The notes below the pieces were generated by a model. That model saw only the letters and a list, made by a program, of their open reading frames with translations, was not told where the DNA came from and ran no database searches. Both the position numbers and the translations under genes were made by a program. Below, piece after piece: positions 8,948 through 57,040 of a DNA stretch of 64,000 bases (position 1 is the stretch's first letter; every line of letters starts with the position of its first letter). The DNA lies in the IMG/VR virus record IMGVR_UViG_3300043418_000072, positions 62,001-126,000 of that record, one strand, 5' to 3'.

Positions 8948-8957
8948 GTTGACCATT

Positions 8958-9254: not shown

Positions 9255-9258
9255 AGTG

Positions 9259-9281
9259 AAAAAGGGGCCTAAGCCCCTTTT
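9259..9281. terminator. Intrinsic terminator, possibly bidirectional
   Basis: AAAAA-GGGGC-CTAA-GCCCC-TTTT just downstream of the AAA ATPase gene. Confidence 0.8.
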
Positions 9282-9292
9282 GTTAACAGCAA

Positions 9293-24767: not shown

Positions 24768-24769
24768 GC

Positions 24770-24840
24770 TTATTCTCCTATGTTAAATTTTAGCATAGGC
24801 AGCAGAATTTGTATAGCGGGATGATGCTCTAAAGGCCGCT
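24770..24840 (-). promoter_or_regulatory. Candidate preQ1-I-like pseudoknot/riboswitch and RBS-sequestering hairpin upstream of queD
   Basis: P1 AGCGG/CCGCT, loop AGCA pairing with tail TGCT, A-rich linker; a CCTATG/CATAGG hairpin covers part of AGGAG. Confidence 0.45.
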
Positions 24841-30845: not shown

Positions 30846-31821
30846 GATTCTTGTACCAGTTATATGCTGTGTCAATGATGTTTTTTATACTGCTGTTAAT
30901 TGGATACCATCCCAATACTGAGTTAGCCACAGATGGATCTGCTACTAACAGGTCTGGATCACCCTGTCTACGTGGACCATACTTGACTGTAGTTAATCCG
31001 TATGTTTCGTAAACGTAGTCAACGATTTCTTTGTTACTGTACCCGCTACCGGTACCTAAGTTAAACACATGATGGCCAGCAATAGTGTCTGGGCCATAAT
31101 GGATAGCAAAGAACTCTGCTGCCTTAGTGTGTGCCACAGCAATATCCCAAACGTGTACGTAGTCGCGAACGCAGGTACCATCTAATGTGTCAAAGTCGTC
31201 GCCATTGATAGTAACTAATCTGCCGCTTAGGCTTGCTTCAATTGCTCGTGCAACTAGATGTGTTGCATCGGGCTCTTGCCCTAAGTCACCAGTTACTGCC
31301 GCGCCAGCAGCATTAAAATATCTAAAGCAAATGGTGTTAAATCCATATGCGGAACCGTAATCCTTTAGCACTTGTTCAACGATCATTTTAGTTGAACCGT
31401 AAGGGCTAATTGGCTGTAAGGGGCTGTTTATTGTTATTGGTGATTCTTTGGGAACCCCATATACGCTGGCGCTACTACTAAACATAATAGTAGGCCGCTT
31501 TGGTAAATCCTTTAACACATCCAGCATCTTAATAGTCTTACTAACGTTGTTATCGTAATACTCTGCTGGATTTGTCATGCTTGGGCCAACTAGACTAGTG
31601 CCTGCACAATGCACAATAATGTCTGGTTGCAGCATGATGTACATGCTGAGTGCAGCTTTGCTAGCAAAGCAATTGATCAAATGACCGTCAATGTCCTTGA
31701 CAGTGTGTTCACGGTAAACAGTGTCAACAATGTGTACAGTGTAGCCTTCTTGTTTGAAAGCTCGAGCAACGTGACTACCAATGTACCCACATCCGCCAGT
31801 GACAATAACGGTCTTTGACAT
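30838..31821 (-). CDS. galE: UDP-glucose 4-epimerase-like protein
   Basis: TGGCGYIGSH, SSSASVYG, YGSTK, RYFNAAGA and DGTCVRDYVHV motifs. Confidence 0.9.
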   Translation of the reverse strand: MSKTVIVTGGCGYIGSHVARAFKQEGYTVHIVDTVYREHTVKDIDGHLINCFASKAALSMYIMLQPDIIVHCAGTSLVGPSMTNPAEYYDNNVSKTIKMLDVLKDLPKRPTIMFSSSASVYGVPKESPITINSPLQPISPYGSTKMIVEQVLKDYGSAYGFNTICFRYFNAAGAAVTGDLGQEPDATHLVARAIEASLSGRLVTINGDDFDTLDGTCVRDYVHVWDIAVAHTKAAEFFAIHYGPDTIAGHHVFNLGTGSGYSNKEIVDYVYETYGLTTVKYGPRRQGDPDLLVADPSVANSVLGWYPINSSIKNIIDTAYNWYKNRV

Positions 31822-39882: not shown

Positions 39883-42552
39883 TTATTCCCAACTAAACAA
39901 ACTATCAAACGTTGTTTTAATGTCAGTGCTCTCAGAGATCTTCCACTCCAATACTCCCAACAAGTTCTCAACCTTTTGGTCCACGATAGTGGTTTCCATT
40001 AAGTCTTGGTCAAACGGCAAATCCTTGAACCATTGCGGGATGTGTGCTTCGTCGGTTGGATAACCAACGCTGGTATAACCCAATGGATTATCCTTTAGCT
40101 TACATACGATAGTCTTCATACCGTCAACAATACCTGTTGAGTAGTTGTCACTGTGCATACGCTTTAGGCTGTTCCAGTTCATAGCGGCGCGAACGTGTCC
40201 GGGCATGTTGGCTTTACCTTGTGCAACTTCTGCCGCAGTGTACTTGGTTAAGTTGTTTACACGTTTGGGTGTGCCCTTTTCCCAAGCTGGCTTTGCAGCA
40301 AACTCTAGTTTGAAGTTACGCACCTTGTCAATTACAACTTGGCGTACATCGTCGCCTTCGCTAGTTAACACATCAAGCAAAATCTCACTCAGGAAGTCTT
40401 GTACAATCTTAGGTGTATCACTACGCTTCAAGTCAAGGCCCATGGCTTTAACTTTGCCTGGCTTACCATCTGTATCCAATCGCTTGTTTTCCAAATCGTA
40501 AATTAGCACTGCGTAACGTTTCTTCTTGATAAACAAACCTTTGTAAGCAACTAGTTCACGTCCACCTTTAATGATAGCACCCATTTCTCGCGGACAGTGA
40601 CATGCACGTTCCATGAATTCCGGAAAGCTATCGTTGACTCCGTCAGCAATGGTATCGTAGAGTTGAACGCAGATGTCTTTGTTCCACTCCATCGTACCTG
40701 CTTCTACTTCCGCTTTAATGGCAGGCCACGCACTAAAGTATACCGAGTCTGTGTCACCGTAGATAACCGAGTCACCAACGTGGTCATATTTGCCAGTAAT
40801 CGCTTCGTTGACTGTTGCGTCCATGTGCTTGGCGATGATGCGGCCAGTGAGCGTTGTGCTCTGACCAATGCGTTGATCGAAGAAGCGACAACCTGCATTG
40901 AGGATGGCGCCGTATAAGCTGTTGAGGTTAATTTTTTTAACGAGCTGTCGCTTGTCCCAGAACGCTGTGTCCTCAGGAGTTGTTGCGGTCTTCTTTTTGG
41001 CTTGCATTTCTTTTCGTTCGGCATACCATCTTTCTAGCAGTCCGGGAATAATACCCTTCATGTCATATTTAAAAATTGTACCATTGGCACTGATAGTCCA
41101 AGGCTGATTACCTTCAAAGATAATCTTCCACACATCGGCTGCACTGTGTACAGTTTCGCCGCCACCTTCCCAATCAATGGTGATTTCTGTACCGGGCTTG
41201 CCTTCCATTACCGCTTGATACTCTAGTGTACCAAACATGTTTTCCCAAGCATCTGCAAAACTAGACCCTGCGGCCATTTTGTCTGCAATATACTTGTCAG
41301 TCATTGTGGTTCGCAGTTGTCCGACGATTGTTTCTGGGCCCATGTTAAGGGCTCGAATAGCCGAGGGGTAGAGCGAGTTAATGTCAATCGCTCCGATGTA
41401 GTTGTGTACTCCCTTTTTGGGGTAAGCAACGTAGGCACCTGCCGCTTGTGTTTCACCTTGATCATCTCGACTCTTTCTATTAGGAACAATCATACCTCTT
41501 GCGTGAGCTTCGTTGATAATCGCCTGCTCCGTTACAGCTACCGCACCCATTGTGGTCTGTAACAACACGGTGTTGTCGTGTGCAAGTTCGTTAGCAAGAT
41601 CTAGGAAACGTAGTTTCTTGTCTAGCTTTGCTAACAACATGGTATCTTGTCGGTTATATTCAATAAACGTAGGAAAGTCTTTGTTGTACAATTGGTCCAA
41701 CGTGCCTTCGTAGGCTGTCTTACGCTCATCTAGTTCATATTCGCCAATGGCGTCCAAACTATAACTGTGTCGTTCTTCATATGTGTACTTGCGGTACAGT
41801 TGCATATAGTCCAAATGCACACGACCCAACAAGTCGAATGTCAATTGTTCTGCACCAAAACGTTCAAACATACGCTGCTTCGGCATTTGTCCCCACAAGC
41901 ATAATCGTCTAGTGTCGTCTTTACTCAACACCTTAGTAATACGCATTGTGGTATAGGGAATATCAAAGCCTTCACTGTTCCAACCACTTAGGATGTCTGC
42001 GTCTTCAATCAAGTCAAGGAACGTGTCTAGCATGTCCTTTTCTTTTTCAAACAGATAGCAGTTTTCAAAGCGATTACAAATCTCTTGTGCAGTTTCCCAG
42101 CTATAGGTCTTAGGTGGTACTACTAGAGTAACCATCTTGTCTAGCCAGTCTAGGTACACAGAGATAGCAGTAATTGGGTTAAAGGGATCTTCAGGTCGAC
42201 TGTAACCACGTACTGGATCAAAGTCGACCTCAATGTCGAAAAAGGCTGTTTGTAGCTTAGGTGAGCTAGCGCCTAAGTAGTTACTTTCAAGGCAACGAAA
42301 GATTGGGTTAATATCACTTTCCCAAAGTCTCTTGTCGCTGTTGATGCGTAGCTCTTTCTGGTACTCTTTGTTGTTACGAGTACTAAATCTAGACACAGGT
42401 GTGTCGTAGATGGTGCGGAACTTGCCGCGTGGATCGTCATAATAAAACATGTATTCGGCTGGGTATTCACGAAAAACACGTTCGCCGTTAACTCGTTCTA
42501 CTACATGGATCTTGTCTTTTGCTCTGTCAAAGATTGCGTCAACGTAACTCAT
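39883..42552 (-). CDS. Family B DNA polymerase (gp43-like)
   Basis: Exo I FDIEV, Exo II WNSEGFDIPY, DINSLYPS, K.NLNSLYG, YGDTDS and KKRY motifs. Confidence 0.97.
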   Translation of the reverse strand: MSYVDAIFDRAKDKIHVVERVNGERVFREYPAEYMFYYDDPRGKFRTIYDTPVSRFSTRNNKEYQKELRINSDKRLWESDINPIFRCLESNYLGASSPKLQTAFFDIEVDFDPVRGYSRPEDPFNPITAISVYLDWLDKMVTLVVPPKTYSWETAQEICNRFENCYLFEKEKDMLDTFLDLIEDADILSGWNSEGFDIPYTTMRITKVLSKDDTRRLCLWGQMPKQRMFERFGAEQLTFDLLGRVHLDYMQLYRKYTYEERHSYSLDAIGEYELDERKTAYEGTLDQLYNKDFPTFIEYNRQDTMLLAKLDKKLRFLDLANELAHDNTVLLQTTMGAVAVTEQAIINEAHARGMIVPNRKSRDDQGETQAAGAYVAYPKKGVHNYIGAIDINSLYPSAIRALNMGPETIVGQLRTTMTDKYIADKMAAGSSFADAWENMFGTLEYQAVMEGKPGTEITIDWEGGGETVHSAADVWKIIFEGNQPWTISANGTIFKYDMKGIIPGLLERWYAERKEMQAKKKTATTPEDTAFWDKRQLVKKINLNSLYGAILNAGCRFFDQRIGQSTTLTGRIIAKHMDATVNEAITGKYDHVGDSVIYGDTDSVYFSAWPAIKAEVEAGTMEWNKDICVQLYDTIADGVNDSFPEFMERACHCPREMGAIIKGGRELVAYKGLFIKKKRYAVLIYDLENKRLDTDGKPGKVKAMGLDLKRSDTPKIVQDFLSEILLDVLTSEGDDVRQVVIDKVRNFKLEFAAKPAWEKGTPKRVNNLTKYTAAEVAQGKANMPGHVRAAMNWNSLKRMHSDNYSTGIVDGMKTIVCKLKDNPLGYTSVGYPTDEAHIPQWFKDLPFDQDLMETTIVDQKVENLLGVLEWKISESTDIKTTFDSLFSWE

Positions 42553-43511: not shown

Positions 43512-44612
43512 TCACAAGCTCAATTCGTCATCTTGCTTGTGAAGGTGTGCTTTTATTAATTTATCAATATATCCAAGGTTGCGTAAAACTTTGTAGGCCA
43601 AGTTTTCTACACCAAACTCACCGTATTGGTCTAGTCCACTTCTGCGCATCTTGCGGATCTTATCTGTAATGCGTTGTATGTCTGCTGAATCATCTGCGGT
43701 AGCTAATGCGGTATCGATTTGTTTAATTAGGTCGTGTACTTTGTGGTTAACCGCAGAATCATCAATGCTTGGTGGTTCAAACTTGGGTTCGTTAATCCAA
43801 CGATCGTTCAGGATACTGTAGACACCTGCACTAACTGGTGGTTCTTCAGAATCCTCTACATATAGTTCTACATCGTATCCACGAATGGTTACATCGTGTG
43901 CGTCATTCCATATTTGTTTTTTAGCACGATAAAACGCCGCAGCAATATCGTCGCATTGTAGGTCAGAGTAGCGAGTGACAATATGAAGGTCAAAATCGCT
44001 GTATTTCGTGTAGTTATAGTTACACATACTACCGGTTAAGACGATATCTAGCACCTTAAAGTCAGGTATTTCCAAGTAGTCTACAAACACCTTGGCGATC
44101 TGCATTAGCTTTAATTTAACTTCTGGACGTAAGCGATCGTTTTTCCATGCAGCAGAATTTAGGGTGTCGTGGTAAGCAATGTTGTTTTGTACGTATTCAA
44201 AGTCTTCTTTGATAATAGCAGGCTCGTTAAAGAACTTAGGGTACTTCTTGCCAAACTCACGCAAAACAACCCCAGCCATTGCGTTTGCTTCATTTTCTTC
44301 TGGACTACCTGTTGCGCCTGCGCCGGGTGGTAAACGATCTTCTTCGCGCTGCCGCCAATGCACTAGCTCGTGTGCTAGTGTACGTAGAATATCAATCGGG
44401 TGACGGTGTTCGATTGCAATGTAAATGGTTTCCGTTGCATCGTTATATGCACCAAAGCTACCTTGTTCATCATTGCCCGGCATTACTAGTACCGGGACAA
44501 TTTTAGGTAGCTTTTCAATCTCAAGGATGCGAACAGCGATAGGCAAAAACTTTGCTATCGCATGTACGAATCCCGAAGTTGATTTATCTGTGCTTCTTGG
44601 CATCGTTGGCAA
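43512..44612 (-). CDS. HExxH metallopeptidase-like domain fused to a Pol-beta-type nucleotidyltransferase
   Basis: LAHELVH...ENEANA, then GS..NYNY...SDFDLH...DVELY. Confidence 0.7.
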   Translation of the reverse strand: MPTMPRSTDKSTSGFVHAIAKFLPIAVRILEIEKLPKIVPVLVMPGNDEQGSFGAYNDATETIYIAIEHRHPIDILRTLAHELVHWRQREEDRLPPGAGATGSPEENEANAMAGVVLREFGKKYPKFFNEPAIIKEDFEYVQNNIAYHDTLNSAAWKNDRLRPEVKLKLMQIAKVFVDYLEIPDFKVLDIVLTGSMCNYNYTKYSDFDLHIVTRYSDLQCDDIAAAFYRAKKQIWNDAHDVTIRGYDVELYVEDSEEPPVSAGVYSILNDRWINEPKFEPPSIDDSAVNHKVHDLIKQIDTALATADDSADIQRITDKIRKMRRSGLDQYGEFGVENLAYKVLRNLGYIDKLIKAHLHKQDDELSL

Positions 44613-45753
44613 ATTGTTTGTTAGTTGCTTTAACTATGCCACTAAATCGTTTGTTACCACGATCATACTCGCCACGCTTGTCGGATGCACTTGCATCGGC
44701 GGCAGCGGTTGTTTTGTATTGTGCTAACTTCTCATTAGACAATTCATTAATTGGATTGTCGCTAGTTGGCAATTTAGCACGTAGCTGATCTGCCATTTGT
44801 TTGAAGTGCTGTGCTTGGGTATCACGGCCATAGCGTTCTGCTTTAGCTTGACGCTTTTCGTAGTCAGTGATCTGTGCCCATAGTGCATTGTGCTTGCGCT
44901 CGTCTGCACCTTCTGCTACTTTATTAGTGTAATCGTCGCTCGGGCCGCTTGGATACTTCTCGTACTCAGTATAACGCTGTCTTGCCAACTTCTTGGCTTC
45001 TGGGTTAGCGTCACGTAATTGTTTGTATGTGCCCATGTGTTGAGCCATAATCTGTTCGGATGTGCCCACACGCACTCTTACAGGTAGATAATCTTTATAG
45101 CTTGGGCAGAACAATTTAAACAATGATTCGGGGTGTTTGACTTTATAGTACTCAACAGTGTCTGTCATCCACTGGTCAATGTCTGCTCTACCACGTGGGT
45201 AGTTCCCTGGATCGGCCATCTCCGGTTCTGGTGCTTTCTTCTTGAAGCGATCGAGGATACCTTCTTTAACTTCAGCAGGTGCAGCTAGTGTCATCTTGCT
45301 CATGCCCTTGCCCGATTGCTGCCAAACACGATACATTTTACCATCTGCACCTTTTAACACCATAGCATTGCCAGGAATACGACTAGAATCATATTGTACA
45401 ACCATGGCATTTTGTCCACCAACTCGAACGTGTGGTTTTTGGTCATCAAAATGTTGAGCTCCGACTGCTAGTGCGCCAGCAACAACCGGGGCGCCAAGTA
45501 ATGTAGCAGTATCTTTCCAGCTTTCTGGTAATTCGTGCCCTGTAACTTCCTCAACTTCGCCACCTGTGCTGTATACAATCTCTTCAATTTGATTAAAGAT
45601 TGAACGGGGAGCAGTCATGTAATCACCGGCCCAATCAATGTAGTTCCCAAACTTCTGCATTACATGTTCATATGAACGTTCACCGTCAATGACAAAAGTT
45701 ACGGTACTTTCTGTACCCTTGTTGAGCCCCTCAAATATCTGATTTAAAAACAT
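44584..45753 (-). CDS. Mosaic polyprotein (putative virion-internal cargo)
   Basis: MFLNQIFE leader; modules separated by VKEG, KVAEG and INE. Confidence 0.6.
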   Translation of the reverse strand: MFLNQIFEGLNKGTESTVTFVIDGERSYEHVMQKFGNYIDWAGDYMTAPRSIFNQIEEIVYSTGGEVEEVTGHELPESWKDTATLLGAPVVAGALAVGAQHFDDQKPHVRVGGQNAMVVQYDSSRIPGNAMVLKGADGKMYRVWQQSGKGMSKMTLAAPAEVKEGILDRFKKKAPEPEMADPGNYPRGRADIDQWMTDTVEYYKVKHPESLFKLFCPSYKDYLPVRVRVGTSEQIMAQHMGTYKQLRDANPEAKKLARQRYTEYEKYPSGPSDDYTNKVAEGADERKHNALWAQITDYEKRQAKAERYGRDTQAQHFKQMADQLRAKLPTSDNPINELSNEKLAQYKTTAAADASASDKRGEYDRGNKRFSGIVKATNKQFANDAKKHR

Positions 45754-45754
45754 G

Positions 45755-48109
45755 TTATACTCCGCCGCCGGCCTTCTTTATTAGTGTATTTAGTTGGGTA
45801 GCAGTTGACGGGTTTGACATAACATTACCAATGGCAGGAGCCATTGCAGCAATGGTATCTTTATCCATTGAATTCATTGGTGCACCGGTGTCAGTCTTTT
45901 GCAATGTCTGTGCTGCCTTAGCAGGGTCAATTTGCACCCCAGCGGTCTTTAAGTTAGCTAGATTTTGTTGTAGCTTGGCTTGATTTTGTTTAGCTGCCGC
46001 AGCTTGTGCTGGATTAGGTGCAGCGCCCGGGGCGGTTGCTTGTGTAGATGGTTGAGTTGCACCAGCTACGCCACCTGCGGTAGCAACAGGAGCAGGAACT
46101 GCTTCGTCAACTGTTTCTTGACCGGGGCAAATATCGTTGTAGTTGTCCATAGTCAATGTTTGACCACCTGCGCTTAATTTAATTAAACGTTCAGCAACGT
46201 CATGTAGATCCATATCTGTTTTGGCATCTTCGCGAGCATATTCAAACAAGCGAATCATTAATGGAATATCCATTGTAACTGTGTCAGTTGGGTTTGTCCC
46301 TTCTTCCATTGATTGCGCTGCTGCACGAATACCTATTACTGTAGCGTTCTTGCTGTCAGCCCACTTGTATGCTGCTTCTTGACTGCTGAATTCCTTGCGC
46401 CACATTACACGCTGATCGCGCTTGTTGTAAGCATAACCATATGCTTCAACGGCTGTGTCGTTTTGAATAGGCTGTGCTTCGTCGCTGTAGTTTTCTTGTA
46501 CCTGTGGTTCAACTAATTCGCCAATCTTGTTACGAATAAGACCAATTAGCTTGCGATGTGTACCAGTTAACACACGGTTCTTTTCAATGAAGTTAAGAAT
46601 GTGCTCTGTTTCTGCTTTATACTTTGCTCTCCACTGCGGAGTTCTAGCGGTAGTAATGTCCTTGACGTTGTCTAATCTATCGGCAAGTTTAATTACAAGA
46701 CCGTAGCTGCTCATTGCAGCCATCTTGTGTGCTAAGTACTGAGCCTTGCCCATCTGTTTAATTTGTTCAGGATCACTTGTTAGTTCTTGGACCAGGCTAG
46801 CAACTAGACCACCAAACAAGTCATGCAAAATCTCATGTGTAGTATCGGTATCTTCAACTGTGTCGTGCAAATATGCAGCACTAATTAGTGCTTCAAGGTT
46901 GTGAGATTGTTTATATTGTCTAATATGATCAGCAACACGCATCGGGTGAGTGATGTATGGATCACCACCGGCTCTAGTTTGACCAGCGTGAGCTTGAGTT
47001 GCGTACTGTAACGCTTCTTCCTCGCCTTCAGCCATTGGTCTATCTGCGCCGTTGATAGTAATCATTGGGTTACGAACACCCTTCTTCTTGCACCATGCTT
47101 CAACTTTAGCTTCTGCTTCTTCTGTTGATGTTGCTGTTACTGTGACAAAATGTGCGTCTGCCGCAGTAGGTCCGTACTCAACTGTTGCACGGTACTTGAC
47201 TGGTTGAGATTGTTCTTCCGCCACACCTTGCCTTGGTAATAACTTGTTAATAGTAGTTTTAACTTTCAATCCCTTTTGTGGATGGTCAAATATAACGCCA
47301 ACATCATTGATGTCTTTGATGAATGCAATTTTGCCTGAACCCTGATAGCCACGCACACAAACAGTATCGCCTACTTTATATTTGGGAGTTGCTGCGAATC
47401 CACCTCCGCCACCTAAGCCTTCCGCCACACCTTGCTGTTGTGGGTTGAACTCTAAGGCACCTTGTGTATTACCCATGATGATATTGGCAATCTTGTAGAT
47501 GTTGTCAAAGGTCAAATCAAAGTGACGCTCAAACGGATGACCTTTTAACAAACTAAATGTAGTGAGTAGTTTGCCTTTTATTTGTCCAGTAAAGCCGCCG
47601 CCAGTGTACTTACCAATTTGGATAGCTCCGCGAGTGCTATGCGCACCCTTACGACCTGCTCTAGTCTCGTAGTATGAGTAAAGCATTGTTGGACCAAACT
47701 CCATTGGGTCATGTGGAACAAAGCGGGCTTTGATTGTTGTCTTAACAACGTTTTCTACACAGTCAAAGTCTTTAGCTACGATTTGTTTTACTTGTTCGAT
47801 GAATTCTGCCCATGGAATAAACTTACGTGAGCCTCCACCTTCGTCTGGGGCAAATTCGTCTACTTGTTGTTTGTACTGCGCGAACTCTTCTGCAAGTGAA
47901 TGTTTAACTGCATTCTCGGTTAGTTCTTTTTCTAGATCAGCAAGCATGTTCTTGCTTTCTGCTGCGCCCACTAAACGACCAGCAAAAGGATGTTTACCAT
48001 CTTTACGCTTAGTGGCTTTTTCAGTACCGCGAACTTGATCGCCGGGTTTTTGTTCTGGCTCTCCAGCGAACTTGTTCATTGACTCTAGTAGTTTACGCAT
48101 ATCGCTCAT
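45755..48109 (-). CDS. Mosaic polyprotein containing a Mesh1/SpoT-type HD hydrolase module (about 46500-47025)
   Basis: A..AH.GQ.R..G.PYI.HP..VA, AAYLHDTVEDT, V.ELT and KLADRLDN motifs; QGVAE linkers. Confidence 0.8.
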   Translation of the reverse strand: MSDMRKLLESMNKFAGEPEQKPGDQVRGTEKATKRKDGKHPFAGRLVGAAESKNMLADLEKELTENAVKHSLAEEFAQYKQQVDEFAPDEGGGSRKFIPWAEFIEQVKQIVAKDFDCVENVVKTTIKARFVPHDPMEFGPTMLYSYYETRAGRKGAHSTRGAIQIGKYTGGGFTGQIKGKLLTTFSLLKGHPFERHFDLTFDNIYKIANIIMGNTQGALEFNPQQQGVAEGLGGGGGFAATPKYKVGDTVCVRGYQGSGKIAFIKDINDVGVIFDHPQKGLKVKTTINKLLPRQGVAEEQSQPVKYRATVEYGPTAADAHFVTVTATSTEEAEAKVEAWCKKKGVRNPMITINGADRPMAEGEEEALQYATQAHAGQTRAGGDPYITHPMRVADHIRQYKQSHNLEALISAAYLHDTVEDTDTTHEILHDLFGGLVASLVQELTSDPEQIKQMGKAQYLAHKMAAMSSYGLVIKLADRLDNVKDITTARTPQWRAKYKAETEHILNFIEKNRVLTGTHRKLIGLIRNKIGELVEPQVQENYSDEAQPIQNDTAVEAYGYAYNKRDQRVMWRKEFSSQEAAYKWADSKNATVIGIRAAAQSMEEGTNPTDTVTMDIPLMIRLFEYAREDAKTDMDLHDVAERLIKLSAGGQTLTMDNYNDICPGQETVDEAVPAPVATAGGVAGATQPSTQATAPGAAPNPAQAAAAKQNQAKLQQNLANLKTAGVQIDPAKAAQTLQKTDTGAPMNSMDKDTIAAMAPAIGNVMSNPSTATQLNTLIKKAGGGV
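47215..47231 (-). repeat. QGVAE linker repeat, copy A
   Basis: GCAAGGTGTGGCGGAAG, identical to copies B and E. Confidence 0.85.
47419..47435 (-). repeat. QGVAE linker repeat, copy B
   Basis: GCAAGGTGTGGCGGAAG; 20 nt identity with copy E. Confidence 0.85.
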
Positions 48110-49569
48110 TTGTAGATTCCTGTACCGATCTTAGGGGTTAAACGTTTTGCAACATTCTTTACACGCTTAGGAACACCTGTCCCTGGCTTGCCTGTTCCGC
48201 CTGCTGGGCCAGTAGCAAATCCACCTGCGCCTGTGCCGCCAGCAGTCATCTCGCTAACTGTTTGCTTGCCTTCAGCAACACCTTGACCTTTTAAGCTACG
48301 AGTAGCTGCATTCAATTGACTAATACTTACACTGCGAGTTGTATCGCTGTTCCAGATTAAGTCAACACGTAAAGGTCTGCCATTTTTATAAAAATGCAAT
48401 TCGTTGCTGGTAGTTTTGAAATTATCTGCACCATACTGACGTAACACTTTTACAGCGTCATTCAATGGCATTGTTTCTGCAACGCCCTCAGCAACACCTT
48501 GCTCCAAAAACTCTTCGTCGGTTAAATTACCGGCTAGCAATGCTTCTAGGGTGTCAATCTGTTGATTATAGATGTCGATTAGATATTCAATTTCCATGTC
48601 GTCGTAAGCATCTGAACCGTCATACCATGTTTCGTCAACTGCTTCTGCTTCGGCATCTGTCAGTCGACGCTTTTGTGCCAATAGCTTTTTCTCTAGCATG
48701 TTGGCAATAGGTGCATACTTACGCACAACCTGTTGCCACATAGGCTCTTGTGCAAACTCTGGAAACTGTGCAGCGGCACCTTCCACCGGATCAAAGTCCT
48801 GGAATAGGTTTAGTGCTAGCACATCCTTAACTGGCATGCCAGCTTTTACTAAGTATTCGTTTAGTTGGCCTTCCGCCACACCTTGCTCACCATCTTGTTG
48901 TGCTTTGGCAGCGGCCGCACGCTTCTTGCGGAAGATTTCACGGAAGTATGCTTCATCATCTGGGTTTACACCAGGTGTTTGTTGACCACGGTGTCTCTGC
49001 TTTGCAGGAGCATTACGAGCTGCGTAATAATCTTCGTCGCTGTCAAAGTTGCGTGGATCCACTTCGTTTACTTGTCCAGTGAAGCCTTTATATGCGCCTT
49101 TAACTGCGCCAGTTACGCCGCCAACAATCTTCTTGCCCACTTGCGCCATAAACGGAGTCTTCTCCTGTGGAGCAGTCATTCTGTCCACTGACTTACGTGC
49201 ATTAGCTTCTGCGTCACGCTGTACATCAGCCATTGAATAACCTTCTTCCAATGCAGCTTGCAATTGAGCTTCGGCTGATTCAAATGCAAATGTAGGCATC
49301 GCATGTAAGTCAACTTCTTTGTCTTCGTAGCTTAGGTATTCGTATACTGTACGTAGGTAATCGTTTGCAAGAGTAATCTTCTCGCTTACCCATCCCTCGA
49401 TGTTACCATTGTCGTTAGCTTGGGCTAGAATCTTGTGTAGCTTGATAGCGTAGTCTGCTGCGTGGTAGCAGTCGGCACGAGCCATTTGTACTTCGTGGTC
49501 TGAGTGCATTTCACCTGCATCTTGGGCGATAAATGCGTTGTGTTCTGTGATAAAATCTGTTGTCTTCAT
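48106..49569 (-). CDS. Mosaic polyprotein (putative virion-internal cargo)
   Basis: MKTTDFITE leader, three QGVAEG linkers, TAAATA upstream. Confidence 0.65.
   Translation of the reverse strand: MKTTDFITEHNAFIAQDAGEMHSDHEVQMARADCYHAADYAIKLHKILAQANDNGNIEGWVSEKITLANDYLRTVYEYLSYEDKEVDLHAMPTFAFESAEAQLQAALEEGYSMADVQRDAEANARKSVDRMTAPQEKTPFMAQVGKKIVGGVTGAVKGAYKGFTGQVNEVDPRNFDSDEDYYAARNAPAKQRHRGQQTPGVNPDDEAYFREIFRKKRAAAAKAQQDGEQGVAEGQLNEYLVKAGMPVKDVLALNLFQDFDPVEGAAAQFPEFAQEPMWQQVVRKYAPIANMLEKKLLAQKRRLTDAEAEAVDETWYDGSDAYDDMEIEYLIDIYNQQIDTLEALLAGNLTDEEFLEQGVAEGVAETMPLNDAVKVLRQYGADNFKTTSNELHFYKNGRPLRVDLIWNSDTTRSVSISQLNAATRSLKGQGVAEGKQTVSEMTAGGTGAGGFATGPAGGTGKPGTGVPKRVKNVAKRLTPKIGTGIYK
48271..48285 (-). 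repeat. QGVAE linker repeat, copy C (synonymous variant)
   Basis: CAAGGTGTTGCTGAA. Confidence 0.75.
48475..48501 (-). repeat. QGVAEGVAE linker, copy D (variant, doubled)
   Basis: CAAGGTGTTGCTGAGGGCGTTGCAGAA. Confidence 0.75.
48870..48886 (-). repeat. QGVAE linker repeat, copy E
   Basis: GCAAGGTGTGGCGGAAG. Confidence 0.85.
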
Positions 49570-49595
49570 GCGAATTTCCTGTATATTATATTTAG

Positions 49596-49865
49596 TTACA
49601 CAATAAACTTGAGGCCTGCACCTTGTCCGTTTACTGCAACATTGTTAGTGATAAATTGTGCATCAGTGTTGCTGCATTTTTCAATACGTAATTCATGCCA
49701 GCCATTGTCTAAATAAACTTCAATGTGCTCACGGATATAGTGTCTACTGGTTTCCCAAATAAACGTGCGCTCCGTTAGCAGTTGGTCATCAATATAGACT
49801 CTGTATGCTGGCGGTGTTGTGTCCCACTTGCACCAAACGTCTACGTCAATGCAAGTGTGGTTCAT
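49596..49865 (-). CDS. Small beta-rich hypothetical protein
   Basis: PPAYRVYIDD.LLTER...G.HELRIE. Confidence 0.65.
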   Translation of the reverse strand: MNHTCIDVDVWCKWDTTPPAYRVYIDDQLLTERTFIWETSRHYIREHIEVYLDNGWHELRIEKCSNTDAQFITNNVAVNGQGAGLKFIV

Positions 49866-51577
49866 TTTCTAGCCTTTAGGGTCGCTAACTGTTCTTGTAA
49901 CTGTGTTAAACGGCTTAATAACTGCTCTGCTTCTTTGATCTTGTGTTTAGGTAACTTACGGGTTAAGCCGTATGCTTTCATCATTTTAGGTAATGTGCTA
50001 GCGTCAACATCATTTTGATCGCCCATGGTGGCCATTACGTATCGTGGATCTTTGCTGTTGCTAACAACACCTACACCTGCTGCATCTTCGCCTAGTGGGT
50101 TATGCAATGCGCCCCACCCGGGATGACGTGGATCGTTAATGTCCAACGAGCTATCGTCTGCTGGTTTGCGTTTAGCTAACCGGTCTTTTTCATGTTCTTT
50201 GTCAATCAAGTCACCAACTAATGCTTTCATCGGATCAGTCTTGCGCAATTCTTCACGTGCTCTTAGCTGCGCCATGTGACGATTGAAGTCTGCCGCATTA
50301 AATGGGGCATTGTGGTCGTAGGCTTCATCAATGGCAGCATCTGGCAATTCTACATTAAATTTTATTGCAATTTCGGCTCTAAAATTGTCATATGCTTTGC
50401 TATTATCGAATATAAACGTGTGTGACATTCCGTGTTTGCTTGTTTGATTGCTCGGAAATTTAATAGTCTCGCCTGCATCGTTTACAAATAAGTATTGATT
50501 TCCACTTTTTCCAACTAGCGTTGCATGTATAAGATCGGAGTTGAGTGGTATGATTCTATTCTGAATCAGCATCAATGGAGTCACAATGTATTTTTTATTT
50601 TTTACTGGCGTACTAGAAAATCTATCTAGCCCGGTAAAATATTCAGCGGTGTGGTTATCTGATTCTAGCAATGTTCCATCAATGTAGTATGCTTCGAAGA
50701 TAGCCATCTTGTCTTCTATTGACAGCTCCTCACCCAACTCTGTCCACTGCGGGACTGCATTTTCATTGGCATGCTTAAAGTACTGCACTTCGCGCTCGTG
50801 CTTTTGTGCAGCGGCTTTAGTTGGGAAAGTACCTAGATTTTTGTTACCATGCTTACTAAGCAAACGGTACTGACTACCGTGTTTAACAATATGCTCGCTA
50901 ATACCAGGAATAGCACTTGCACTGTCTGTAGCATGTGGACTGATAGAGTCCTCATTCATTGGGATTTTGTCTAGGATACGGCCCACTTCTGGGTCATTGC
51001 GACCGTACATTTGCAATAGGTATTCGCCACGTGCTTTAGCATCGTTACGGATACTGTTCCACAATGCGCGATTTTCAGTGCCGTGGCTAGCATCGTATTG
51101 CTGACCATTGATTGTGATGACTTTCTTGCGTTCTGCTGCAATAATAACGTAGCCATGCTTATCGGCAGTTTGACACTTGTTTAGATCTTCAAACTTTTGG
51201 TAGTAACTAGGCTGGCCATCTTTCTTGTATGTGCCAGGCTTTAGGCGATCTGCGTCAGGGGCGCCAACTGCAACTACAAACACAGTAGATGCAGGGTCAA
51301 ATTGTGGAGGAAGGATGTAAGGGCTTTTAACTTCTAAGATGCGATCGTTAGGCACACCAGCGGCGTGCATTAACACTGTCTTGTCTGTGAAGTTAAAGGG
51401 ACTTTTAGGCAGCTCTGTCTTGTTGCTAGTTGCAATGTAGACGTTATCGCGACCGTATTTGGCTTGTAGGCTTTCAAATACGTCGCGATGTCCTAGATGG
51501 AAGGGCTGGAAACGCCCTGGGTAAATTACAACTACTTGCGGCTGTGCCGCTTCAGTAAACATTTCAGCAATAAACAT
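49862..51577 (-). CDS. HIGH-motif cytidylyltransferase-like domain followed by mosaic modules
   Basis: MFIAEMFTE leader; YPGRFQPFHLGH, SPF.F..K and VG..D..R motifs; later modules bounded by MNE, ISE, LLE, IDE and LGE. Confidence 0.75.
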   Translation of the reverse strand: MFIAEMFTEAAQPQVVVIYPGRFQPFHLGHRDVFESLQAKYGRDNVYIATSNKTELPKSPFNFTDKTVLMHAAGVPNDRILEVKSPYILPPQFDPASTVFVVAVGAPDADRLKPGTYKKDGQPSYYQKFEDLNKCQTADKHGYVIIAAERKKVITINGQQYDASHGTENRALWNSIRNDAKARGEYLLQMYGRNDPEVGRILDKIPMNEDSISPHATDSASAIPGISEHIVKHGSQYRLLSKHGNKNLGTFPTKAAAQKHEREVQYFKHANENAVPQWTELGEELSIEDKMAIFEAYYIDGTLLESDNHTAEYFTGLDRFSSTPVKNKKYIVTPLMLIQNRIIPLNSDLIHATLVGKSGNQYLFVNDAGETIKFPSNQTSKHGMSHTFIFDNSKAYDNFRAEIAIKFNVELPDAAIDEAYDHNAPFNAADFNRHMAQLRAREELRKTDPMKALVGDLIDKEHEKDRLAKRKPADDSSLDINDPRHPGWGALHNPLGEDAAGVGVVSNSKDPRYVMATMGDQNDVDASTLPKMMKAYGLTRKLPKHKIKEAEQLLSRLTQLQEQLATLKARK

Positions 51578-53195: not shown

Positions 53196-53951
53196 TCACG
53201 GTTTCACGATCTCGTGAATTTTTCCGACCATCCCCGGAGCAATCAATCCGATCATTGTTGTAATAGATGGGTCGTTGGTATAAACAAAACAACCCCATAT
53301 GTATTTCAATGGGCCCGATAACATGTTCATATTAGCTTTAGAAACTTTAACTTCGCTGCCCATTGTTTTTAAATAATTAACAATTGACTGCTTGGTTTCC
53401 ATGCTGTAGGATCCGTCTCTGAGCACTATCTTGTATTTGTATTCTTGCTTAGAATTAGGTGCTGCAATAATATGACCCGCTTCTAGCAATGCCTGCTGTT
53501 CCGGGCTAGCTGGTGTACTAATACTTAATAGTCTGCTAGCAATAGTTCGATCGTAGTTTAGTCTTGTGGCAATGTCTCTAAGAGTCTGCTCGTCTTTAGT
53601 ATAAACCTGTAGCCAGGGCTCCTCAATGCGCATTCGTATACGATTACCATATCCATTTTTGATACTGCGCAATTCTTCAAGGAATACAGGGTCTGATTTT
53701 TTTAGTTCATCTGCTTGCCGCAGTGCCCAATTGGATTGTGATGCCCAACTTCCGCCATAGTTAAAATGCTTTTGCTTAGATAGTCTGTCGGCTAAGTGAT
53801 TTGCAATGTAATCATTGGGCCTCGTGTCGGTGATAGACCTACTACCGTGAGCCTCTATGACCAGCTTATAACAAAACTGGCCATAGAACTGCTTACGTGT
53901 ATCTTCGCAAACGATCTTAGGATTTAGTTTGGTCCAGAACAATGAAACCAT
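53196..53951 (-). CDS. Hypothetical protein
   Basis: 251 aa, two similar halves ending VYTKDE and VYTNDP. Confidence 0.65.
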   Translation of the reverse strand: MVSLFWTKLNPKIVCEDTRKQFYGQFCYKLVIEAHGSRSITDTRPNDYIANHLADRLSKQKHFNYGGSWASQSNWALRQADELKKSDPVFLEELRSIKNGYGNRIRMRIEEPWLQVYTKDEQTLRDIATRLNYDRTIASRLLSISTPASPEQQALLEAGHIIAAPNSKQEYKYKIVLRDGSYSMETKQSIVNYLKTMGSEVKVSKANMNMLSGPLKYIWGCFVYTNDPSITTMIGLIAPGMVGKIHEIVKP

Positions 53952-56208
53952 CTTCGTTTACTGTAGGTTGTGGTGCGATGTCAAACGCTGATTGTGCTTC
54001 GAATGTAAACTCTTTATTAACATAGTCTACTACCATGATGGTGTTAGGACCAATGTTATCAAACAAGATTTTCTTACTCAATGGTACTTTAATCAAGTCG
54101 TTAATCTTACGTTGCACAGGGCGAGCACCCATCTTAGCATCAAAGCCTGTAGCAATGATTTCATCAATAGCCGACTCGCTCAAGCGCACTTTGATCTGAC
54201 GTTCTGCAAGCAACACGTTGATTTCGTTAACAAACTTGCTGACAATCTTGCGCATACTCAATTGGTCCAGCTTGTTGAACTTAACAATGCCGTCTAAGCG
54301 ATTGCGGAACTCTGGCTTAAAGAAGTCCTTAACTGCTTTGTCATCCTCGTCAGTCTTTTGCATACTGCGACCAAAACCAATGTTGTTACGCTCGTTTGCT
54401 GCTGCACCCAAGTTACTTGTAAGGATCACAATACAGTTACGGCAGTCAGCTTTCTTGCCGTTGCTGCTAGTAACCATACCTTCATCCATTAAGCTCAACA
54501 AGATGTTAGATACGTCGGGGTGAGCTTTTTCAATCTCATCCATTAAGATGATACTGTTAGGGCTTTTCTCAACGTCACTAATCAACATTCCGCCGCCCAA
54601 GTTGCCATCGTCGTAACCAACATAGCCAGGAGGCGCACCAATCAGTTTAGCCACGCTGTGCTTCTCTTGGTACTCGCTCATATCGTAACGCAACAGTTTC
54701 ATGCCCAAGTTCTCTGCAAGTAACTTAGCCAGTTCAGTTTTACCTGTACCAGTTGGGCCAAGGAACAAGAAGTTACCAACGGGTTTGTTCAAGCTCTTCA
54801 AGCCAGCTCGTGCCACGTAGATCTTTTCCAATACAGAATCAACCGCTTGGTCTTGTCCATACAATTTAACTTTAATGTTGCTTTCAAGGTTAGTGATTGC
54901 ACCACCATTGTTGGTATTACCAATTTGTTCAACCGGGATCTTAGTAAACTTGCTGATTGCATCCACAATATGGCTACGTGTAACAACAAAGTCCACAGTC
55001 TTAATCTTAAGACGAGCACATGTGCTGTCAATCAAGTCAATTGCTTTGTCAGGCAGCTTCTTGTCAGTTTGGTAACGAACGCTAAGATCAACTGCTGCGT
55101 CAATAGCTTCGTCTGTAATAACGCCACCATGGAATGATTCGAACTTCTCTTTGAGACCTTTAAGAATATCCTTAGCAACTGCTGGAGTTGGCTCATCAAC
55201 AGTAATACGCTGGAAACGGCGCATCAATGCACGATCCTTCTCAAAGCTCTGGCTGTATTCTTCCCAAGTTGTGCTTGCTAACACTTTGATTTGGCCTTTA
55301 GTCAATGCAGGCTTGATCATATTACCAAAGTCGACGCTGCTGTTGCTACCAGAACCTGCCCCACGCATCTGGTGCGCTTCGTCAATAAACAAAATTGCCT
55401 TGCCTTTTGCTTTGAGACCTTTAATAACGTCTTGGAACTTTTCTTCAAACTCGCCGCGGTACTTAGATCCAGCAAGCAAGCTACCAATGTCCAAGTTGTA
55501 GACAGTGTGGTCTTTCAAGTACTCAGGTACAGTGCCGTTGACAATGTTAAGGGCAAGACCTTCTGCAATGGCAGTTTTACCTACACCGGGATCGCCAATC
55601 AACAACACGTTGCTCTTGTTACGCTTAGCCAACACTTCTGCAATTTCGTCCAGCTCGTATTCGCGACCAATTACTGGATCGATGGTGCCTTCGATTGCCT
55701 GCTTGTTTAGATTAGCACAGTACTGCTCAATGAACTCGTCTGCTTTCTCTTTGCCAGCTTCTTTGCGATGTGCTTCTTCTGTATAGTGCTTGTTGTAGTA
55801 GTCGACAAGTTTTGCACGATCCATGCCGTACTTGACCATGAAGTAGTGTGCATAGGTGCTGTTCTCAGAGTGCAAGCTCAGGAACAAGTCAATGACTTGA
55901 ACGTGTGTACGTGCAGAAAATAACACTTGCGTAAATGCTCGATTAAACACACGCTCCAGCGCATGAGTCTTCTTTGGCTCAGTAACATCGGGGTTAACCA
56001 AGTCTGTTAGGCCTGCAATGTATGTTTCGAGGTCTTTGACCAAGCCATCAGTATCGATGCCGTAGCCGTAAATCAATTCATTGAATGGCTTGTATTTAAC
56101 AAGACAGAGCAACATGTGTTCTGCAACCACGTACTCGTGTTTGTGTTCTTTTGCAAGGTTTGTTGCTTCTGCAACGATGTGGTCAATTTCTGGATTAGTT
56201 TGTAGCAT
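53917..56208 (-). CDS. clpA: ClpA-like Hsp100 AAA+ ATPase
   Basis: Clp N-domain, two Walker A motifs (GDPGVGKT, GPTGTGKT), GAPPGYVG and an IGF loop (NIGFG); no ClpB middle domain. Confidence 0.88.
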   Translation of the reverse strand: MLQTNPEIDHIVAEATNLAKEHKHEYVVAEHMLLCLVKYKPFNELIYGYGIDTDGLVKDLETYIAGLTDLVNPDVTEPKKTHALERVFNRAFTQVLFSARTHVQVIDLFLSLHSENSTYAHYFMVKYGMDRAKLVDYYNKHYTEEAHRKEAGKEKADEFIEQYCANLNKQAIEGTIDPVIGREYELDEIAEVLAKRNKSNVLLIGDPGVGKTAIAEGLALNIVNGTVPEYLKDHTVYNLDIGSLLAGSKYRGEFEEKFQDVIKGLKAKGKAILFIDEAHQMRGAGSGSNSSVDFGNMIKPALTKGQIKVLASTTWEEYSQSFEKDRALMRRFQRITVDEPTPAVAKDILKGLKEKFESFHGGVITDEAIDAAVDLSVRYQTDKKLPDKAIDLIDSTCARLKIKTVDFVVTRSHIVDAISKFTKIPVEQIGNTNNGGAITNLESNIKVKLYGQDQAVDSVLEKIYVARAGLKSLNKPVGNFLFLGPTGTGKTELAKLLAENLGMKLLRYDMSEYQEKHSVAKLIGAPPGYVGYDDGNLGGGMLISDVEKSPNSIILMDEIEKAHPDVSNILLSLMDEGMVTSSNGKKADCRNCIVILTSNLGAAANERNNIGFGRSMQKTDEDDKAVKDFFKPEFRNRLDGIVKFNKLDQLSMRKIVSKFVNEINVLLAERQIKVRLSESAIDEIIATGFDAKMGARPVQRKINDLIKVPLSKKILFDNIGPNTIMVVDYVNKEFTFEAQSAFDIAPQPTVNEDGFIVLDQTKS

Positions 56209-57040
56209 CTTGATTTTTAGTTAGTTGACGAATGGCTTCTACCTGAGTTTCTGTTAAATTTGTTGGAACAGTGATATTTGCAATCAAATACAAATTACCC
56301 CTGTTGGATTGATTTAGCGCATAAAGACCCTGTCCTCCAATTTTAAATTTAGTCCCGGGCTGCGTACCTTGTGGTACTGTGAGACTAAAAGTTCGGTTGT
56401 CTAAAGTGGTAAACTCTTTGCTACATCCAATTATAGCATCAAGGCAATCAATGTCAATGGATGTGAACAAATCAATTCCGTTAATTTGGAATCTCGGGTG
56501 CGGCATAACAACAATATTAACATACAAATCGCCACGCGGCAATGTGGTAAAAAGGTTGTCGCCGAGACCCGGATACTTAATGCTGCTGTCTGAGTATACA
56601 CCACGCGGGATTTCGATATCAACTACTTGGTCTGATGTTGACCGGTTTGTATTGATATTCAGTGTGCGCTTTTGAACTTCCAATGTTTCTGCTAAGTTTA
56701 TTTGCACAGTAACTCGAATGTCTCGGTTACGCTGTTGGCGCTGTTGGAATCCGGCACCATTAAATGCAAACCCAAAATTACGCATTAGGTCATTGATATC
56801 CATATTGCCGGTATTAAAGCCGTGCTGTCTATTGCCAAATGGGTTACTGCGTTCAGCATCGTATTGCTCACGCTTTTCGGGAGTTTCAATCGCTGCGTAT
56901 GCTGCTTGGATTTCTTGGAACTTAGCTGTGTTGCCACCTTTGTCGGGATGGTTCTTGCTGGCAAGACTGCGATATGCCTTTTTGATATCGTCTTGTGTTG
57001 CCGACTCGGTTAAGCCAAGCGTTTCATAGTGAGTTGACAT
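56195..57040 (-). CDS. DnaJ-class (type II, CbpA-like) chaperone
   Basis: J-domain with HPD, G/F region, C-terminal GDLY/GNLY domain, no Zn finger. Confidence 0.9.
   Translation of the reverse strand: MSTHYETLGLTESATQDDIKKAYRSLASKNHPDKGGNTAKFQEIQAAYAAIETPEKREQYDAERSNPFGNRQHGFNTGNMDINDLMRNFGFAFNGAGFQQRQQRNRDIRVTVQINLAETLEVQKRTLNINTNRSTSDQVVDIEIPRGVYSDSSIKYPGLGDNLFTTLPRGDLYVNIVVMPHPRFQINGIDLFTSIDIDCLDAIIGCSKEFTTLDNRTFSLTVPQGTQPGTKFKIGGQGLYALNQSNRGNLYLIANITVPTNLTETQVEAIRQLTKNQDATN

What the first reader, a model, noticed from the sequence alone, without database searches (positions are those of the whole stretch)
47215..48886. The QGVAE linker is conserved at DNA level (17-20 nt exact repeat across two genes): a possible module-shuffling site
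Seen: GCAAGGTGTGGCGGAAG occurs identically at 47215-47231, 47419-47435 and 48870-48886, with 20 nt identity between the last two. Synonymous variants CAAGGTGTTGCTGA(A/G) occur at 48271 and 48487. Identity at all wobble positions (CAA GGT GTG GCG GAA) in three copies flanking unrelated modules is more than peptide selection requires. All copies are in frame and in direct orientation. Inference: the repeat may serve both as a protease site and as a microhomology or site-specific recombination anchor for in-frame insertion and excision of effector cassettes, an integron-like logic inside a coding sequence. No recombinase is visible in this window.
Basis: partly seen in the sequence, partly recalled or inferred. 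Interest (0 to 1): 0.8.

Follow-up and report, generated by a model that had tools for sequence, protein, structure and literature searches.

The report
Standard in-frame linker joining phage effector cassettes
A clade of uncultured T4-like phages strings small, probably capsid-packaged proteins into polyproteins joined by one five-residue linker (QGVAE) whose 15-18 coding bases are conserved even at silent positions, and protein cassettes are swapped between genes and phages exactly at this linker.

Summary
The 17-mer occurs three times exactly, with two synonymous variants. All five copies lie on the minus strand and encode QGVAE in frame in two adjacent genes.

It is not a local oddity. The same 17-mer filled the 120-locus limit of a viral-contig scan, and all 159 copies read QGVAE. 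After removing one seeding copy per locus, 67% of the remaining QGVAE sites use the identical 15-mer. Codon usage predicts 0.4%, and two of the five codons are rare.

Homology between contigs stops at the linker. In 143 junction pairs only one side is homologous; in 4 pairs both sides are. In an 82-95% identical relative of the window phage, one 123-aa cassette sits in the neighbouring gene, between the same linkers.

The proteins begin with leaders like the T4 capsid targeting sequence. The leader's final Glu aligns with the linker's Glu in front of the same modules.

Best reading: these are internal-protein polyproteins, cut after Glu by a T4-type prohead protease, and the linker DNA is the shared crossover point for in-frame cassette exchange. 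Cleavage and the recombination mechanism are inferred, not shown. No integrase or linked endonuclease was found. I rate it a new variant of known kinds, of high interest.

The parts
48106..49569 (-). Polyprotein gene B (487 aa). Layout: leader MKTTDFITE, module B1, linker, cassette B2, double linker, module B3, linker, Gly-rich tail B4.
   Evidence: The N-terminus resembles the T4 IPII/IPIII leader MKTYQEFIAE.
45755..48109 (-). Polyprotein gene A (784 aa). Its start overlaps the stop of gene B (ATGA). Layout: A1, linker, A2, linker, A3, HD hydrolase, A5, A6, low-complexity tail. The later junctions are degenerate x-x-E sites (PMAE|G, SMEE|G).
48870..48886 (-). Linker 1: canonical 17-mer; QGVAE is at 48871-48885.
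48475..48502 (-). Linker 2: the synonymous variant CAAGGTGTTGCTGAG followed by a tandem extra GVAE unit (a 12-nt duplication).
48270..48286 (-). Linker 3: the synonymous variant CAAGGTGTTGCTGAA.
47419..47435 (-). Linker 4: canonical 17-mer. It shares 20 nt with linker 1.
47215..47231 (-). Linker 5: canonical 17-mer.
48502..48870 (-). Cassette B2 (123 aa, begins GQLNEYLV). In the relative IMGVR_UViG_3300046092_000062 it is absent from gene B and sits in gene A between A1 and A3.
47231..47419 (-). Cassette A2 (63 aa, begins with a Gly run). In the relatives L131, L133 and L134 this position holds a B2-type cassette instead.
46598..47014 (-). HD_4 module, a Mesh1/small-alarmone-hydrolase-like (p)ppGpp hydrolase domain.
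   Evidence: Pfam HD_4 at 3.4e-15; PDB matches to MESH1, the RelA/SpoT hydrolase domain and small alarmone hydrolases.
46115..46309 (-). Module A6. In T4-like phages that lack the linker, its homologues lie in a gene between the portal (gp20) and the prohead protease (gp21).
49862..51577 (-). Upstream gene with the CTS-like start MFIAEMFTE and an NMNAT/cytidylyltransferase-like N-domain. In L047 and L137 homologues of this domain head linker-bearing frames.
44584..45753 (-). Downstream gene with the CTS-like start MFLNQIFEG and a degenerate KVAE|G site. Its C-terminal module (LSNEKLAQYK...) follows PINE here, and follows the leader MKPSDFLTE directly in L020 and L090.

Best explanation
The window comes from a jumbo T4-like phage (100% identical over both polyprotein genes to a 354-kb IMG/VR contig). 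Four consecutive minus-strand genes (44584-51577) encode proteins of the T4 'internal protein' type. Each starts with a short amphipathic leader, M-[KR]-x-x-[DE]-[FIL]-[FIL]-x-E, like the T4 capsid targeting sequence. The two central genes are polyproteins of small independent modules (median about 100 aa across the family). QGVAE is the standard joint between modules.

Inferred step 1: after the leader targets the polyprotein to the prohead core, the T4-type prohead serine protease (Peptidase_S77) cuts after the Glu of V-A-E. This protease cuts after Glu in aliphatic-x-Glu sites. The cut would release each module as a separate packaged protein, to be injected with the DNA. The recognisable modules look like host-takeover or counter-defence enzymes: an alarmone hydrolase here, and GNAT, deaminase and Tat-signal modules elsewhere.

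Shown: the roughly 18 nt that encode the joint (CAAGGTGTGGCGGAAGGC) are conserved at silent positions across a clade whose DNA polymerases are only 55-97% identical. Homology between genomes switches on and off exactly at this element.

Inferred step 2: the element is the shared short-homology crossover point for the very active T4-type recombination machinery. A crossover inside it is automatically in frame and falls between folded units. Cassettes can therefore be deleted, inserted, moved between neighbouring genes or exchanged between co-infecting phages without breaking anything. Because only copies that match the common sequence can take part in this exchange, the majority sequence is maintained as a clade-wide 'standard connector'.
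For: Peptide and DNA conservation:
- All 159 exact 17-mers in 120 viral loci read QGVAE.
- 196 of 233 QGVAE sites are canonical. By leave-one-out, 76 of 113 are canonical against 0.4% expected, binomial p about 1e-153. GCG is the rarest Ala codon at 7%.
- The following Gly codon is GGC in 113 of 145 sites, against a 32% background.
- In an independent sample, 4 of 14 sites are canonical.
- One-nucleotide variants are 30 synonymous and 48 non-synonymous (EGVAE, KGVAE). Silent sites are therefore nearly as constrained as the peptide.

Shuffling:
- 74 junction pairs are homologous only on the left and 69 only on the right, against 4 homologous on both sides.
- DNA identity is about 0.7 on the homologous side, 0.94-1.0 in the linker, and about 0.28 from the next codon on.
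- Unsplit BLAST HSP ends peak exactly at the linker Glu, 4-5 fold over random.
- Cassette B2 lies in gene B in the window and in gene A in a relative. The relative's gene B keeps exactly one linker plus the GVAE unit at the empty site.
- Between L131 and L133 the cassette is 74% identical while both flanks are 95% identical.

Protease and packaging:
- Leaders such as MKTYQFITE, MKAYEFITE and the window's MKTTDFITE resemble T4 MKTYQEFIAE.
- 43 ORFs have the leader's Glu at the position of the linker's Glu in front of the same module.
- T4 sites read from the T4 record are FIAE|A, TITE|A, FLTE|A and LLRE|S (PMC3012670, PMC5694885).
- L015 and L054 carry Peptidase_S77, a scaffold gene, a Gp23 capsid gene and a linker polyprotein within 4.5 kb.
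- Module A6 sits between portal and protease in other T4-like phages.
- Tat signal peptides begin immediately after the linker in L107; L061 shows the same RRGFLKG motif there.

Mechanism plausibility: T4 recombines at 6-10 bp microhomologies (PMC9391042), and T-even adhesins are shuffled at conserved motifs (PMC3157838).
Against: - No cleavage product, virion proteome or recombination event was observed; all evidence is comparative.
- The capsid protein next to a linker gene (L015) has LLE/ILE-type candidate sites, not GVAE, so nothing shows that the protease prefers this exact peptide.
- About 80% of homology endpoints lie away from QGVAE sites, so the linker is one of several kinds of boundary.
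- The identity drop around the L131/L133 cassette is not razor sharp.
- Maintaining 15-18 silent-site-identical bases across polymerases only 55% identical by short-homology exchange alone needs high exchange rates or second-order selection. A sequence-specific factor or an mRNA-level role would explain it more simply.
- Non-canonical variants are not shared within loci beyond chance (4 observed, 2.2 expected), so there is no sign of local gene conversion.
- The prohead protease of the window's own genome was not located.
Confidence: 0.6

Rival explanations
1. The element is the recognition site of a dedicated sequence-specific DNA enzyme encoded elsewhere in these genomes, such as a homing-type endonuclease, nickase or recombinase. 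That enzyme would initiate cassette exchange, giving a true site-specific cassette system inside coding sequence.
For: The constraint on the exact nucleotides is global rather than local. The length, 15-18 nt, is typical of endonuclease or recombinase core sites. T4-like genomes are rich in homing endonucleases. In L015 and L054 a GIY-YIG gene lies directly upstream of the linker gene.
Against: Only 3 of 120 loci hold a GIY-YIG homologue. No recombinase or endonuclease family is conserved next to the linker genes. No integrase was seen among the window ORFs scanned. The element has no dyad symmetry.
Confidence: 0.15
2. The nucleotide conservation serves translation or the mRNA, and shuffling at the site is incidental. 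Examples are a pause at the domain boundary caused by the rare GTG-GCG codons, or the Shine-Dalgarno-like AAGGTG.
For: GTG and GCG are minority codons in these genes. AAGGTG resembles a ribosome binding site (read directly from the sequence). A pause between modules would aid co-translational folding (general knowledge).
Against: Three of the five codons (CAA, GGT, GAA) are the commonest synonymous choices, and the rarest Gly codon is not used. This reading does not explain why homology between genomes breaks exactly here, nor the cassette relocation.
Confidence: 0.12
3. QGVAE is only a flexible hinge that is not cleaved. The proteins act as intact multidomain 'polyvalent' proteins, and the DNA-level exchange role may still apply.
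For: Multidomain polyvalent proteins delivered with phage DNA are common, and some are packaged unprocessed (PMC5512222). No cleavage data exist for this family.
Against: The linker Glu is positionally equivalent to the leader Glu, which is a proven cleavage site in T4. Glu is invariant while the other linker positions vary. Tat signal peptides placed directly after the linker need a free N-terminus to function.
Confidence: 0.2
4. Peptide selection plus chance or codon bias, or recent common descent of all the copies, explains the identity. The DNA itself has no function.
For: Within the window alone there are only five copies, and two of them differ.
Against: 0.4% expected against 67% observed. 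Homologous flanks have diverged to about 70% DNA identity while the linker stays at 94-100%. The conservation spans phages whose polymerases are 55% identical. Bacterial genomes show only single, scattered copies.
Confidence: 0.02

Closest known systems
T4 internal proteins IPI, IPII, IPIII and Alt (capsid targeting sequence; gp21 processing)
   Same: Both have an N-terminal leader of the MKTYQEFIAE type ending in aliphatic-x-Glu. Both are small, hypervariable, unrelated proteins in a T4-like phage, and a T4-type Peptidase_S77 protease is present in the family (PMC3012670).
   Different: In T4 each internal protein is a separate gene with its own leader. Here many modules are concatenated behind one leader and separated by a standard internal site whose DNA is conserved. 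Packaging and injection are not shown here.
Recombinational shuffling at conserved motifs in T-even tail-fibre adhesins (His boxes of gp37; glycine-rich motifs of gp38)
   Same: In both, short conserved in-frame motifs in a T4-type phage separate hypervariable segments, and exchanges occur within or near those motifs (PMC3157838).
   Different: The adhesin motifs are structural core elements of a single domain. Here the motif is a joint between unrelated autonomous modules, is one identical 15-18-mer used hundreds of times, and probably doubles as a protease site.
Polymorphic toxin systems (Rhs, CdiA) with a conserved pre-toxin motif such as VENN or PxxxxDPxGL
   Same: A conserved peptide encoded by conserved DNA marks the point where variable C-terminal domains are swapped by recombination. 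In Rhs that motif is also a cleavage site.
   Different: Those are bacterial systems with one variable tip per protein and a cognate immunity gene. Here cassettes are serial, no immunity genes are present, and the protease would act in trans.
Polyvalent proteins of phages and conjugative elements (Iyer, Burroughs, Anand, de Souza and Aravind 2017)
   Same: Both concatenate 2-15 conflict-related domains delivered with the invading DNA, in some cases released by proteolysis (PMC5512222).
   Different: Release there is ascribed to embedded peptidase domains, and the term 'linker' does not occur in that paper's text, so no standard linker, no conserved linker DNA and no link to the T4 capsid targeting route is described there. 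Most modules here have no Pfam family.
Integron cassette arrays and shufflons
   Same: A single upstream expression signal (here also a targeting signal) serves an array of interchangeable cassettes bounded by a repeated site. In shufflons the repeated site lies in frame.
   Different: There is no IntI or Rci recombinase and no attC-like imperfect palindrome, all repeats are direct, and the cassettes are protein modules rather than whole genes.

Membership tests
T4-type internal (capsid-targeted) proteins | N-terminal capsid targeting sequence of about 10 residues resembling MKTYQEFIAE | tested here: met
   The window genes start MKTTDFITE, MFIAEMFTE and MFLNQIFEG. Many of the 91 complete N-termini fit M-[KR]-x-x-[DE]-[FIL]-[FIL]-x-E. 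The T4 sequences were read from NC_000866.
T4-type internal (capsid-targeted) proteins | Removal of the leader by the prohead protease after Glu in an aliphatic-x-Glu site | not testable with these tools
   The sequence is compatible: ITE in the window, VAE in the linker, and the Glu is aligned across contexts. No proteomic data are available.
T4-type internal (capsid-targeted) proteins | The genome encodes a gp21-type prohead serine protease (Peptidase_S77) and a gp23-type capsid protein | tested here: inconclusive
   Met in the linker-bearing loci L015 and L054. The window's own 64 kb holds no head genes, and the rest of its 354-kb contig could not be read.
T4-type internal (capsid-targeted) proteins | Presence in the virion and injection with the DNA | not testable with these tools
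   No cultured representative exists: tblastn of gene B and of the L107 polyprotein against 50,697 phage records gave no match.
Integron | Tyrosine recombinase IntI adjacent to the cassette array | tested here: not met
   No integrase was found in the 50 window ORFs scanned (not every ORF was scanned). No recombinase family is conserved in the 120 loci.
Integron | attC sites: imperfect inverted repeats that fold as hairpins | tested here: not met
   The 17-mer has no internal complementarity, and its flanks are unrelated between copies.
Shufflon / invertible tail-fibre segments | Inverted in-frame repeats acted on by an Rci/Cin-type recombinase | tested here: not met
   Every copy reads in frame in the coding direction of its own gene, and copies within a gene are direct repeats. 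No such recombinase was found.
Polyvalent proteins (sensu Iyer et al. 2017) | Several unrelated conflict-related domains in one polypeptide of a phage or plasmid | tested here: met
   The window proteins contain up to seven modules, one of them an alarmone hydrolase. GNAT, deaminase and Tat-signal modules occur elsewhere in the family.
Polyvalent proteins (sensu Iyer et al. 2017) | Embedded peptidase domain for self-release | tested here: inconclusive
   The only hit is a sub-threshold DUF6782 metallopeptidase match in cassette B2 (E = 0.003, below the gathering score).

The most novel reading that the evidence does not exclude
The 15-18-nt element is a clade-wide standard connector maintained by a dedicated sequence-specific DNA enzyme still to be identified. 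That would make this the first site-specific cassette-exchange system operating inside open reading frames: an 'in-frame integron' for injected phage effectors, in which one element specifies both the DNA crossover and the protein cleavage.
Probability: 0.15. Interest if true: 0.92.

Novelty: new variant of a known kind. Interest (0 to 1): 0.8.

Why it matters
If this is right, it shows how a large group of environmental T4-like phages builds and constantly re-assorts an arsenal of packaged effector proteins. One leader targets the whole chain to the capsid, one peptide releases the parts, and the DNA encoding that peptide serves as the universal splice point.

It would be an unusually clear natural case of a sequence selected at both the protein and the DNA level for evolvability.

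It also delimits hundreds of unannotated protein modules, most without any Pfam family, as autonomous units. These are good candidates for first-response counter-defence functions.

Finally, it suggests a ready-made design for packaging multi-protein cargo in T4-type capsids.

Tried and rejected
Unbiased codon estimates therefore rest on leave-one-out counts and on loci fetched through peptide patterns.
- Loci fetched through module A6 turned out to be T4-like phages almost entirely without QGVAE, 1 site in 664 kb. They were useless as a codon sample but informative about A6.
- Megablast of the two genes against the phage collection, and tblastn of gene B and of the L107 polyprotein, found no cultured relative. 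Only single modules match cyanophages.
- PHROGs gave no function for the conserved neighbours or for A6-bearing genes.
- Linked homing endonuclease: only 3 of 120 loci.
- Local concerted evolution of variants: not significant.
- T4 late promoter TATAAATA: one copy in the window, not near the cluster.
- 'Dangling' linkers next to stop codons exist (QGVAE*, QGVAEDN*) but are rare, 4 of 128.
- Repoila et al. 1994, on polymorphic T-even internal-protein loci, is not held in the library.
- The string QGVAE in the literature returns only alpha-synuclein papers.
- Assembly chimeras are unlikely as a source of the mosaicism, because a 15-20-nt repeat is shorter than assembler k-mers (inference).
- No structure prediction was run.


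Full report
**Observation.** The 17-mer GCAAGGTGTGGCGGAAG is present exactly at 47215, 47419 and 48870. Three-mismatch variants lie at 48270 and 48486. Shuffles expect 0.18 matches. The sequence reads this way on the minus strand. It lies in two adjacent, overlapping minus-strand ORFs: 48106-49569 (487 aa, 'gene B') and 45755-48109 (784 aa, 'gene A'). Every copy encodes QGVAE in frame. GVAE is found nowhere else in the six frames of the window. Under the window's codon usage, three of five sites sharing all codons has probability 0.0016.

**Genome context.** The family-B DNA polymerase at 39883-42552 is 52% identical to that of Sinorhizobium jumbo phage Phosso and 48% to Atu_ph07. The two genes are 100% identical to IMG/VR contigs of 354 kb and 240 kb. 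The rest of the window holds auxiliary metabolic and chaperone genes. No site-specific recombinase appeared among the ORFs scanned.

**The element is widespread.**
- An exact scan of viral contigs for the 17-mer stopped at its 120-locus limit with 159 copies. All 159 translate as QGVAE.
- 65 loci hold two to six QGVAE sites.
- In 596 Gb of bacterial genomes the same 17-mer occurs only as single copies in GC-rich DNA. None of 120 loci holds two copies.

**The DNA is conserved beyond the peptide.**
- Of 233 QGVAE sites, 196 use CAAGGTGTGGCGGAA.
- After dropping one seeding copy per locus, 76 of 113 do. The codon usage of the same frames predicts 0.4%, with GTG at 21% and GCG at 7%.
- The next codon, when it is Gly, is GGC in 113 of 145 sites against a 32% background. 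The conserved stretch is therefore about 18 nt.
- Around the canonical sequence lies a cloud of one-base variants, 30 silent and 48 replacing (mostly EGVAE and KGVAE). Silent positions are thus almost as constrained as the peptide.
- In loci retrieved through peptide patterns that do not include the linker, 4 of 14 GVAE sites are canonical.
- Non-canonical variants are not shared within loci beyond chance, so the constraint is global.
- The polymerases encoded next to linker genes are 55-97% identical, median 63.5%.

**Breakpoints.**
- I split 140 linker-bearing frames at QGVAE and compared junctions from different loci. In 143 pairs only one side is homologous up to the linker; in 4 pairs both sides are.
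- DNA identity is about 0.7 on the shared side, 0.94-1.0 in the linker, and random from the next codon.
- Without splitting, BLAST HSP ends peak exactly at the linker Glu, 4-5 fold above random. About 80% of ends lie elsewhere, at degenerate linkers and other boundaries.

**A natural experiment in the window's own lineage.**
- In contig 3300046092_000062 (82-95% identical), cassette B2 (window 48502-48870) is missing from gene B. What remains there is one linker plus the extra GVAE unit. That is the expected product of a crossover between linkers 1 and 2.
- In the same contig B2 sits in gene A between A1 and A3, where the window has cassette A2.
- Two relatives with 95% identical flanks carry B2 versions only 74% identical to each other.

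**What the proteins are.**
- Many of the 91 complete N-termini resemble the T4 capsid targeting sequence. Examples are MKTYQFITE, MKAYEFITE and the window's MKTTDFITE. T4 IPII and IPIII begin MKTYQEFIAE.
- In 43 ORFs a module that elsewhere follows QGVAE follows such a leader directly, with the two Glu residues in register.
- T4 prohead-protease sites read from the T4 record are FIAE|A, TITE|A, FLTE|A and LLRE|S. T4-type and giant-phage prohead proteases all cut after Glu (PMC5694885). V-A-E fits this pattern.
- Loci L015 and L054 carry Peptidase_S77, scaffold, Gp23 and a linker polyprotein together.
- Module A6 of gene A lies between portal and protease in other T4-like phages.
- Internal cassettes have a median length of 98 aa, the size of T4 internal proteins.
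- Few modules are recognisable. They are a Mesh1/small-alarmone-hydrolase domain in the window, and GNAT, deaminase and Tat-signal modules elsewhere.

**Mechanism.** I conclude that QGVAE is the standard joint of capsid-targeted internal-protein polyproteins, and that its coding DNA is the common crossover point for in-frame cassette exchange. T4 recombines at 6-10 bp microhomologies (PMC9391042) and shuffles adhesin segments at conserved motifs (PMC3157838), so short-homology recombination is sufficient in principle. No linked endonuclease or recombinase was found, but a trans-acting factor or an mRNA-level role cannot be excluded. Cleavage, packaging and the recombination events themselves are inferred.

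**Novelty.** No paper in the library describes this linker. The polyvalent-protein survey does not mention a linker at all. No cultured phage carries it. A cultured cyanophage, S-SCSM2R, joins some of the same modules through different x-K-E junctions.

Noticed in passing
window 46115-46309; L161 5695-6486: Module A6 of gene A matched 319 stretches in viral contigs. In T4-like phages without the linker it is part of a 263-aa gene between portal and prohead protease, the position of T4 gp67/gp68. It may be a prohead-core attachment module.
   Followed up: partly
window 48109-48270; L161 5695-6486 and 9845-11581: The Gly-rich tail of gene B (TAGGTGAGGFATG) resembles an AGATSGFxTG motif. That motif is present both in the A6-bearing core protein and in the N-arm of the major capsid protein of L161.
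   Followed up: no
L107 5751-8654 (residues 607-627); L061: Twin-arginine (Tat) signal peptides begin immediately after QGVAE (QGVAE|DLSRRGFLKG...). This suggests that some released modules are exported to the host periplasm after injection.
   Followed up: no
window 43512-44612: The gene just downstream of the cluster combines an HExxH motif (LAHELVHW) with a nucleotidyltransferase domain (NTP_transf_2, weak hit; phrog_36119 at 4.9e-51). It could be a metallopeptidase and was not examined further.
   Followed up: no
L137 4789-6798; window gene A residues about 80-95; many post-linker modules: A second recurring junction-like motif, (S/T)LNEFAPG followed by a Gly/Asp-rich stretch, appears several times. 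It often comes directly after QGVAEG (QGVAEGSLNEF...).
   Followed up: no
window 48475-48502; L123 about 6688-6714; L080: Tandem 12-nt duplications of the linker unit occur (QGVAE-GVAE, QGVTE-GVAE, leader-GVAE). The element begins and ends with AAGG, which could promote a one-unit slip.
   Followed up: partly
L015 3241-3987; L054 1956-2678: A GIY-YIG homing endonuclease gene lies between the major capsid gene and the linker polyprotein gene. This recalls T4 segD between genes 23 and 24.
   Followed up: partly
L211 (Synechococcus phage S-SCSM2R, PQ898602) 4057-6504: An 815-aa 'hypothetical protein' next to an NMNAT gene contains the WSDKYKKSIDC and DWQKVNRKDKTDGLS modules joined by VKE|G and LKE|D junctions. 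It is a cultured phage in which polyprotein processing could be tested.
   Followed up: partly
window 53917-57040: The phage encodes a ClpB-like double-AAA chaperone (53917-56208) next to a DnaJ homologue (56195-57040).
   Followed up: no
window 7625-10393: A DUF2201 metallopeptidase plus VWA-like protein lies beside a MoxR-type AAA ATPase. This pairing is usually seen in cellular genomes.
   Followed up: no
window 1558-4525, 23265-28227, 30838-31821: Auxiliary metabolic genes are present: a DegT aminotransferase, two NAD-dependent sugar epimerases/dehydratases, thymidylate synthase and two Rieske-domain proteins.
   Followed up: no
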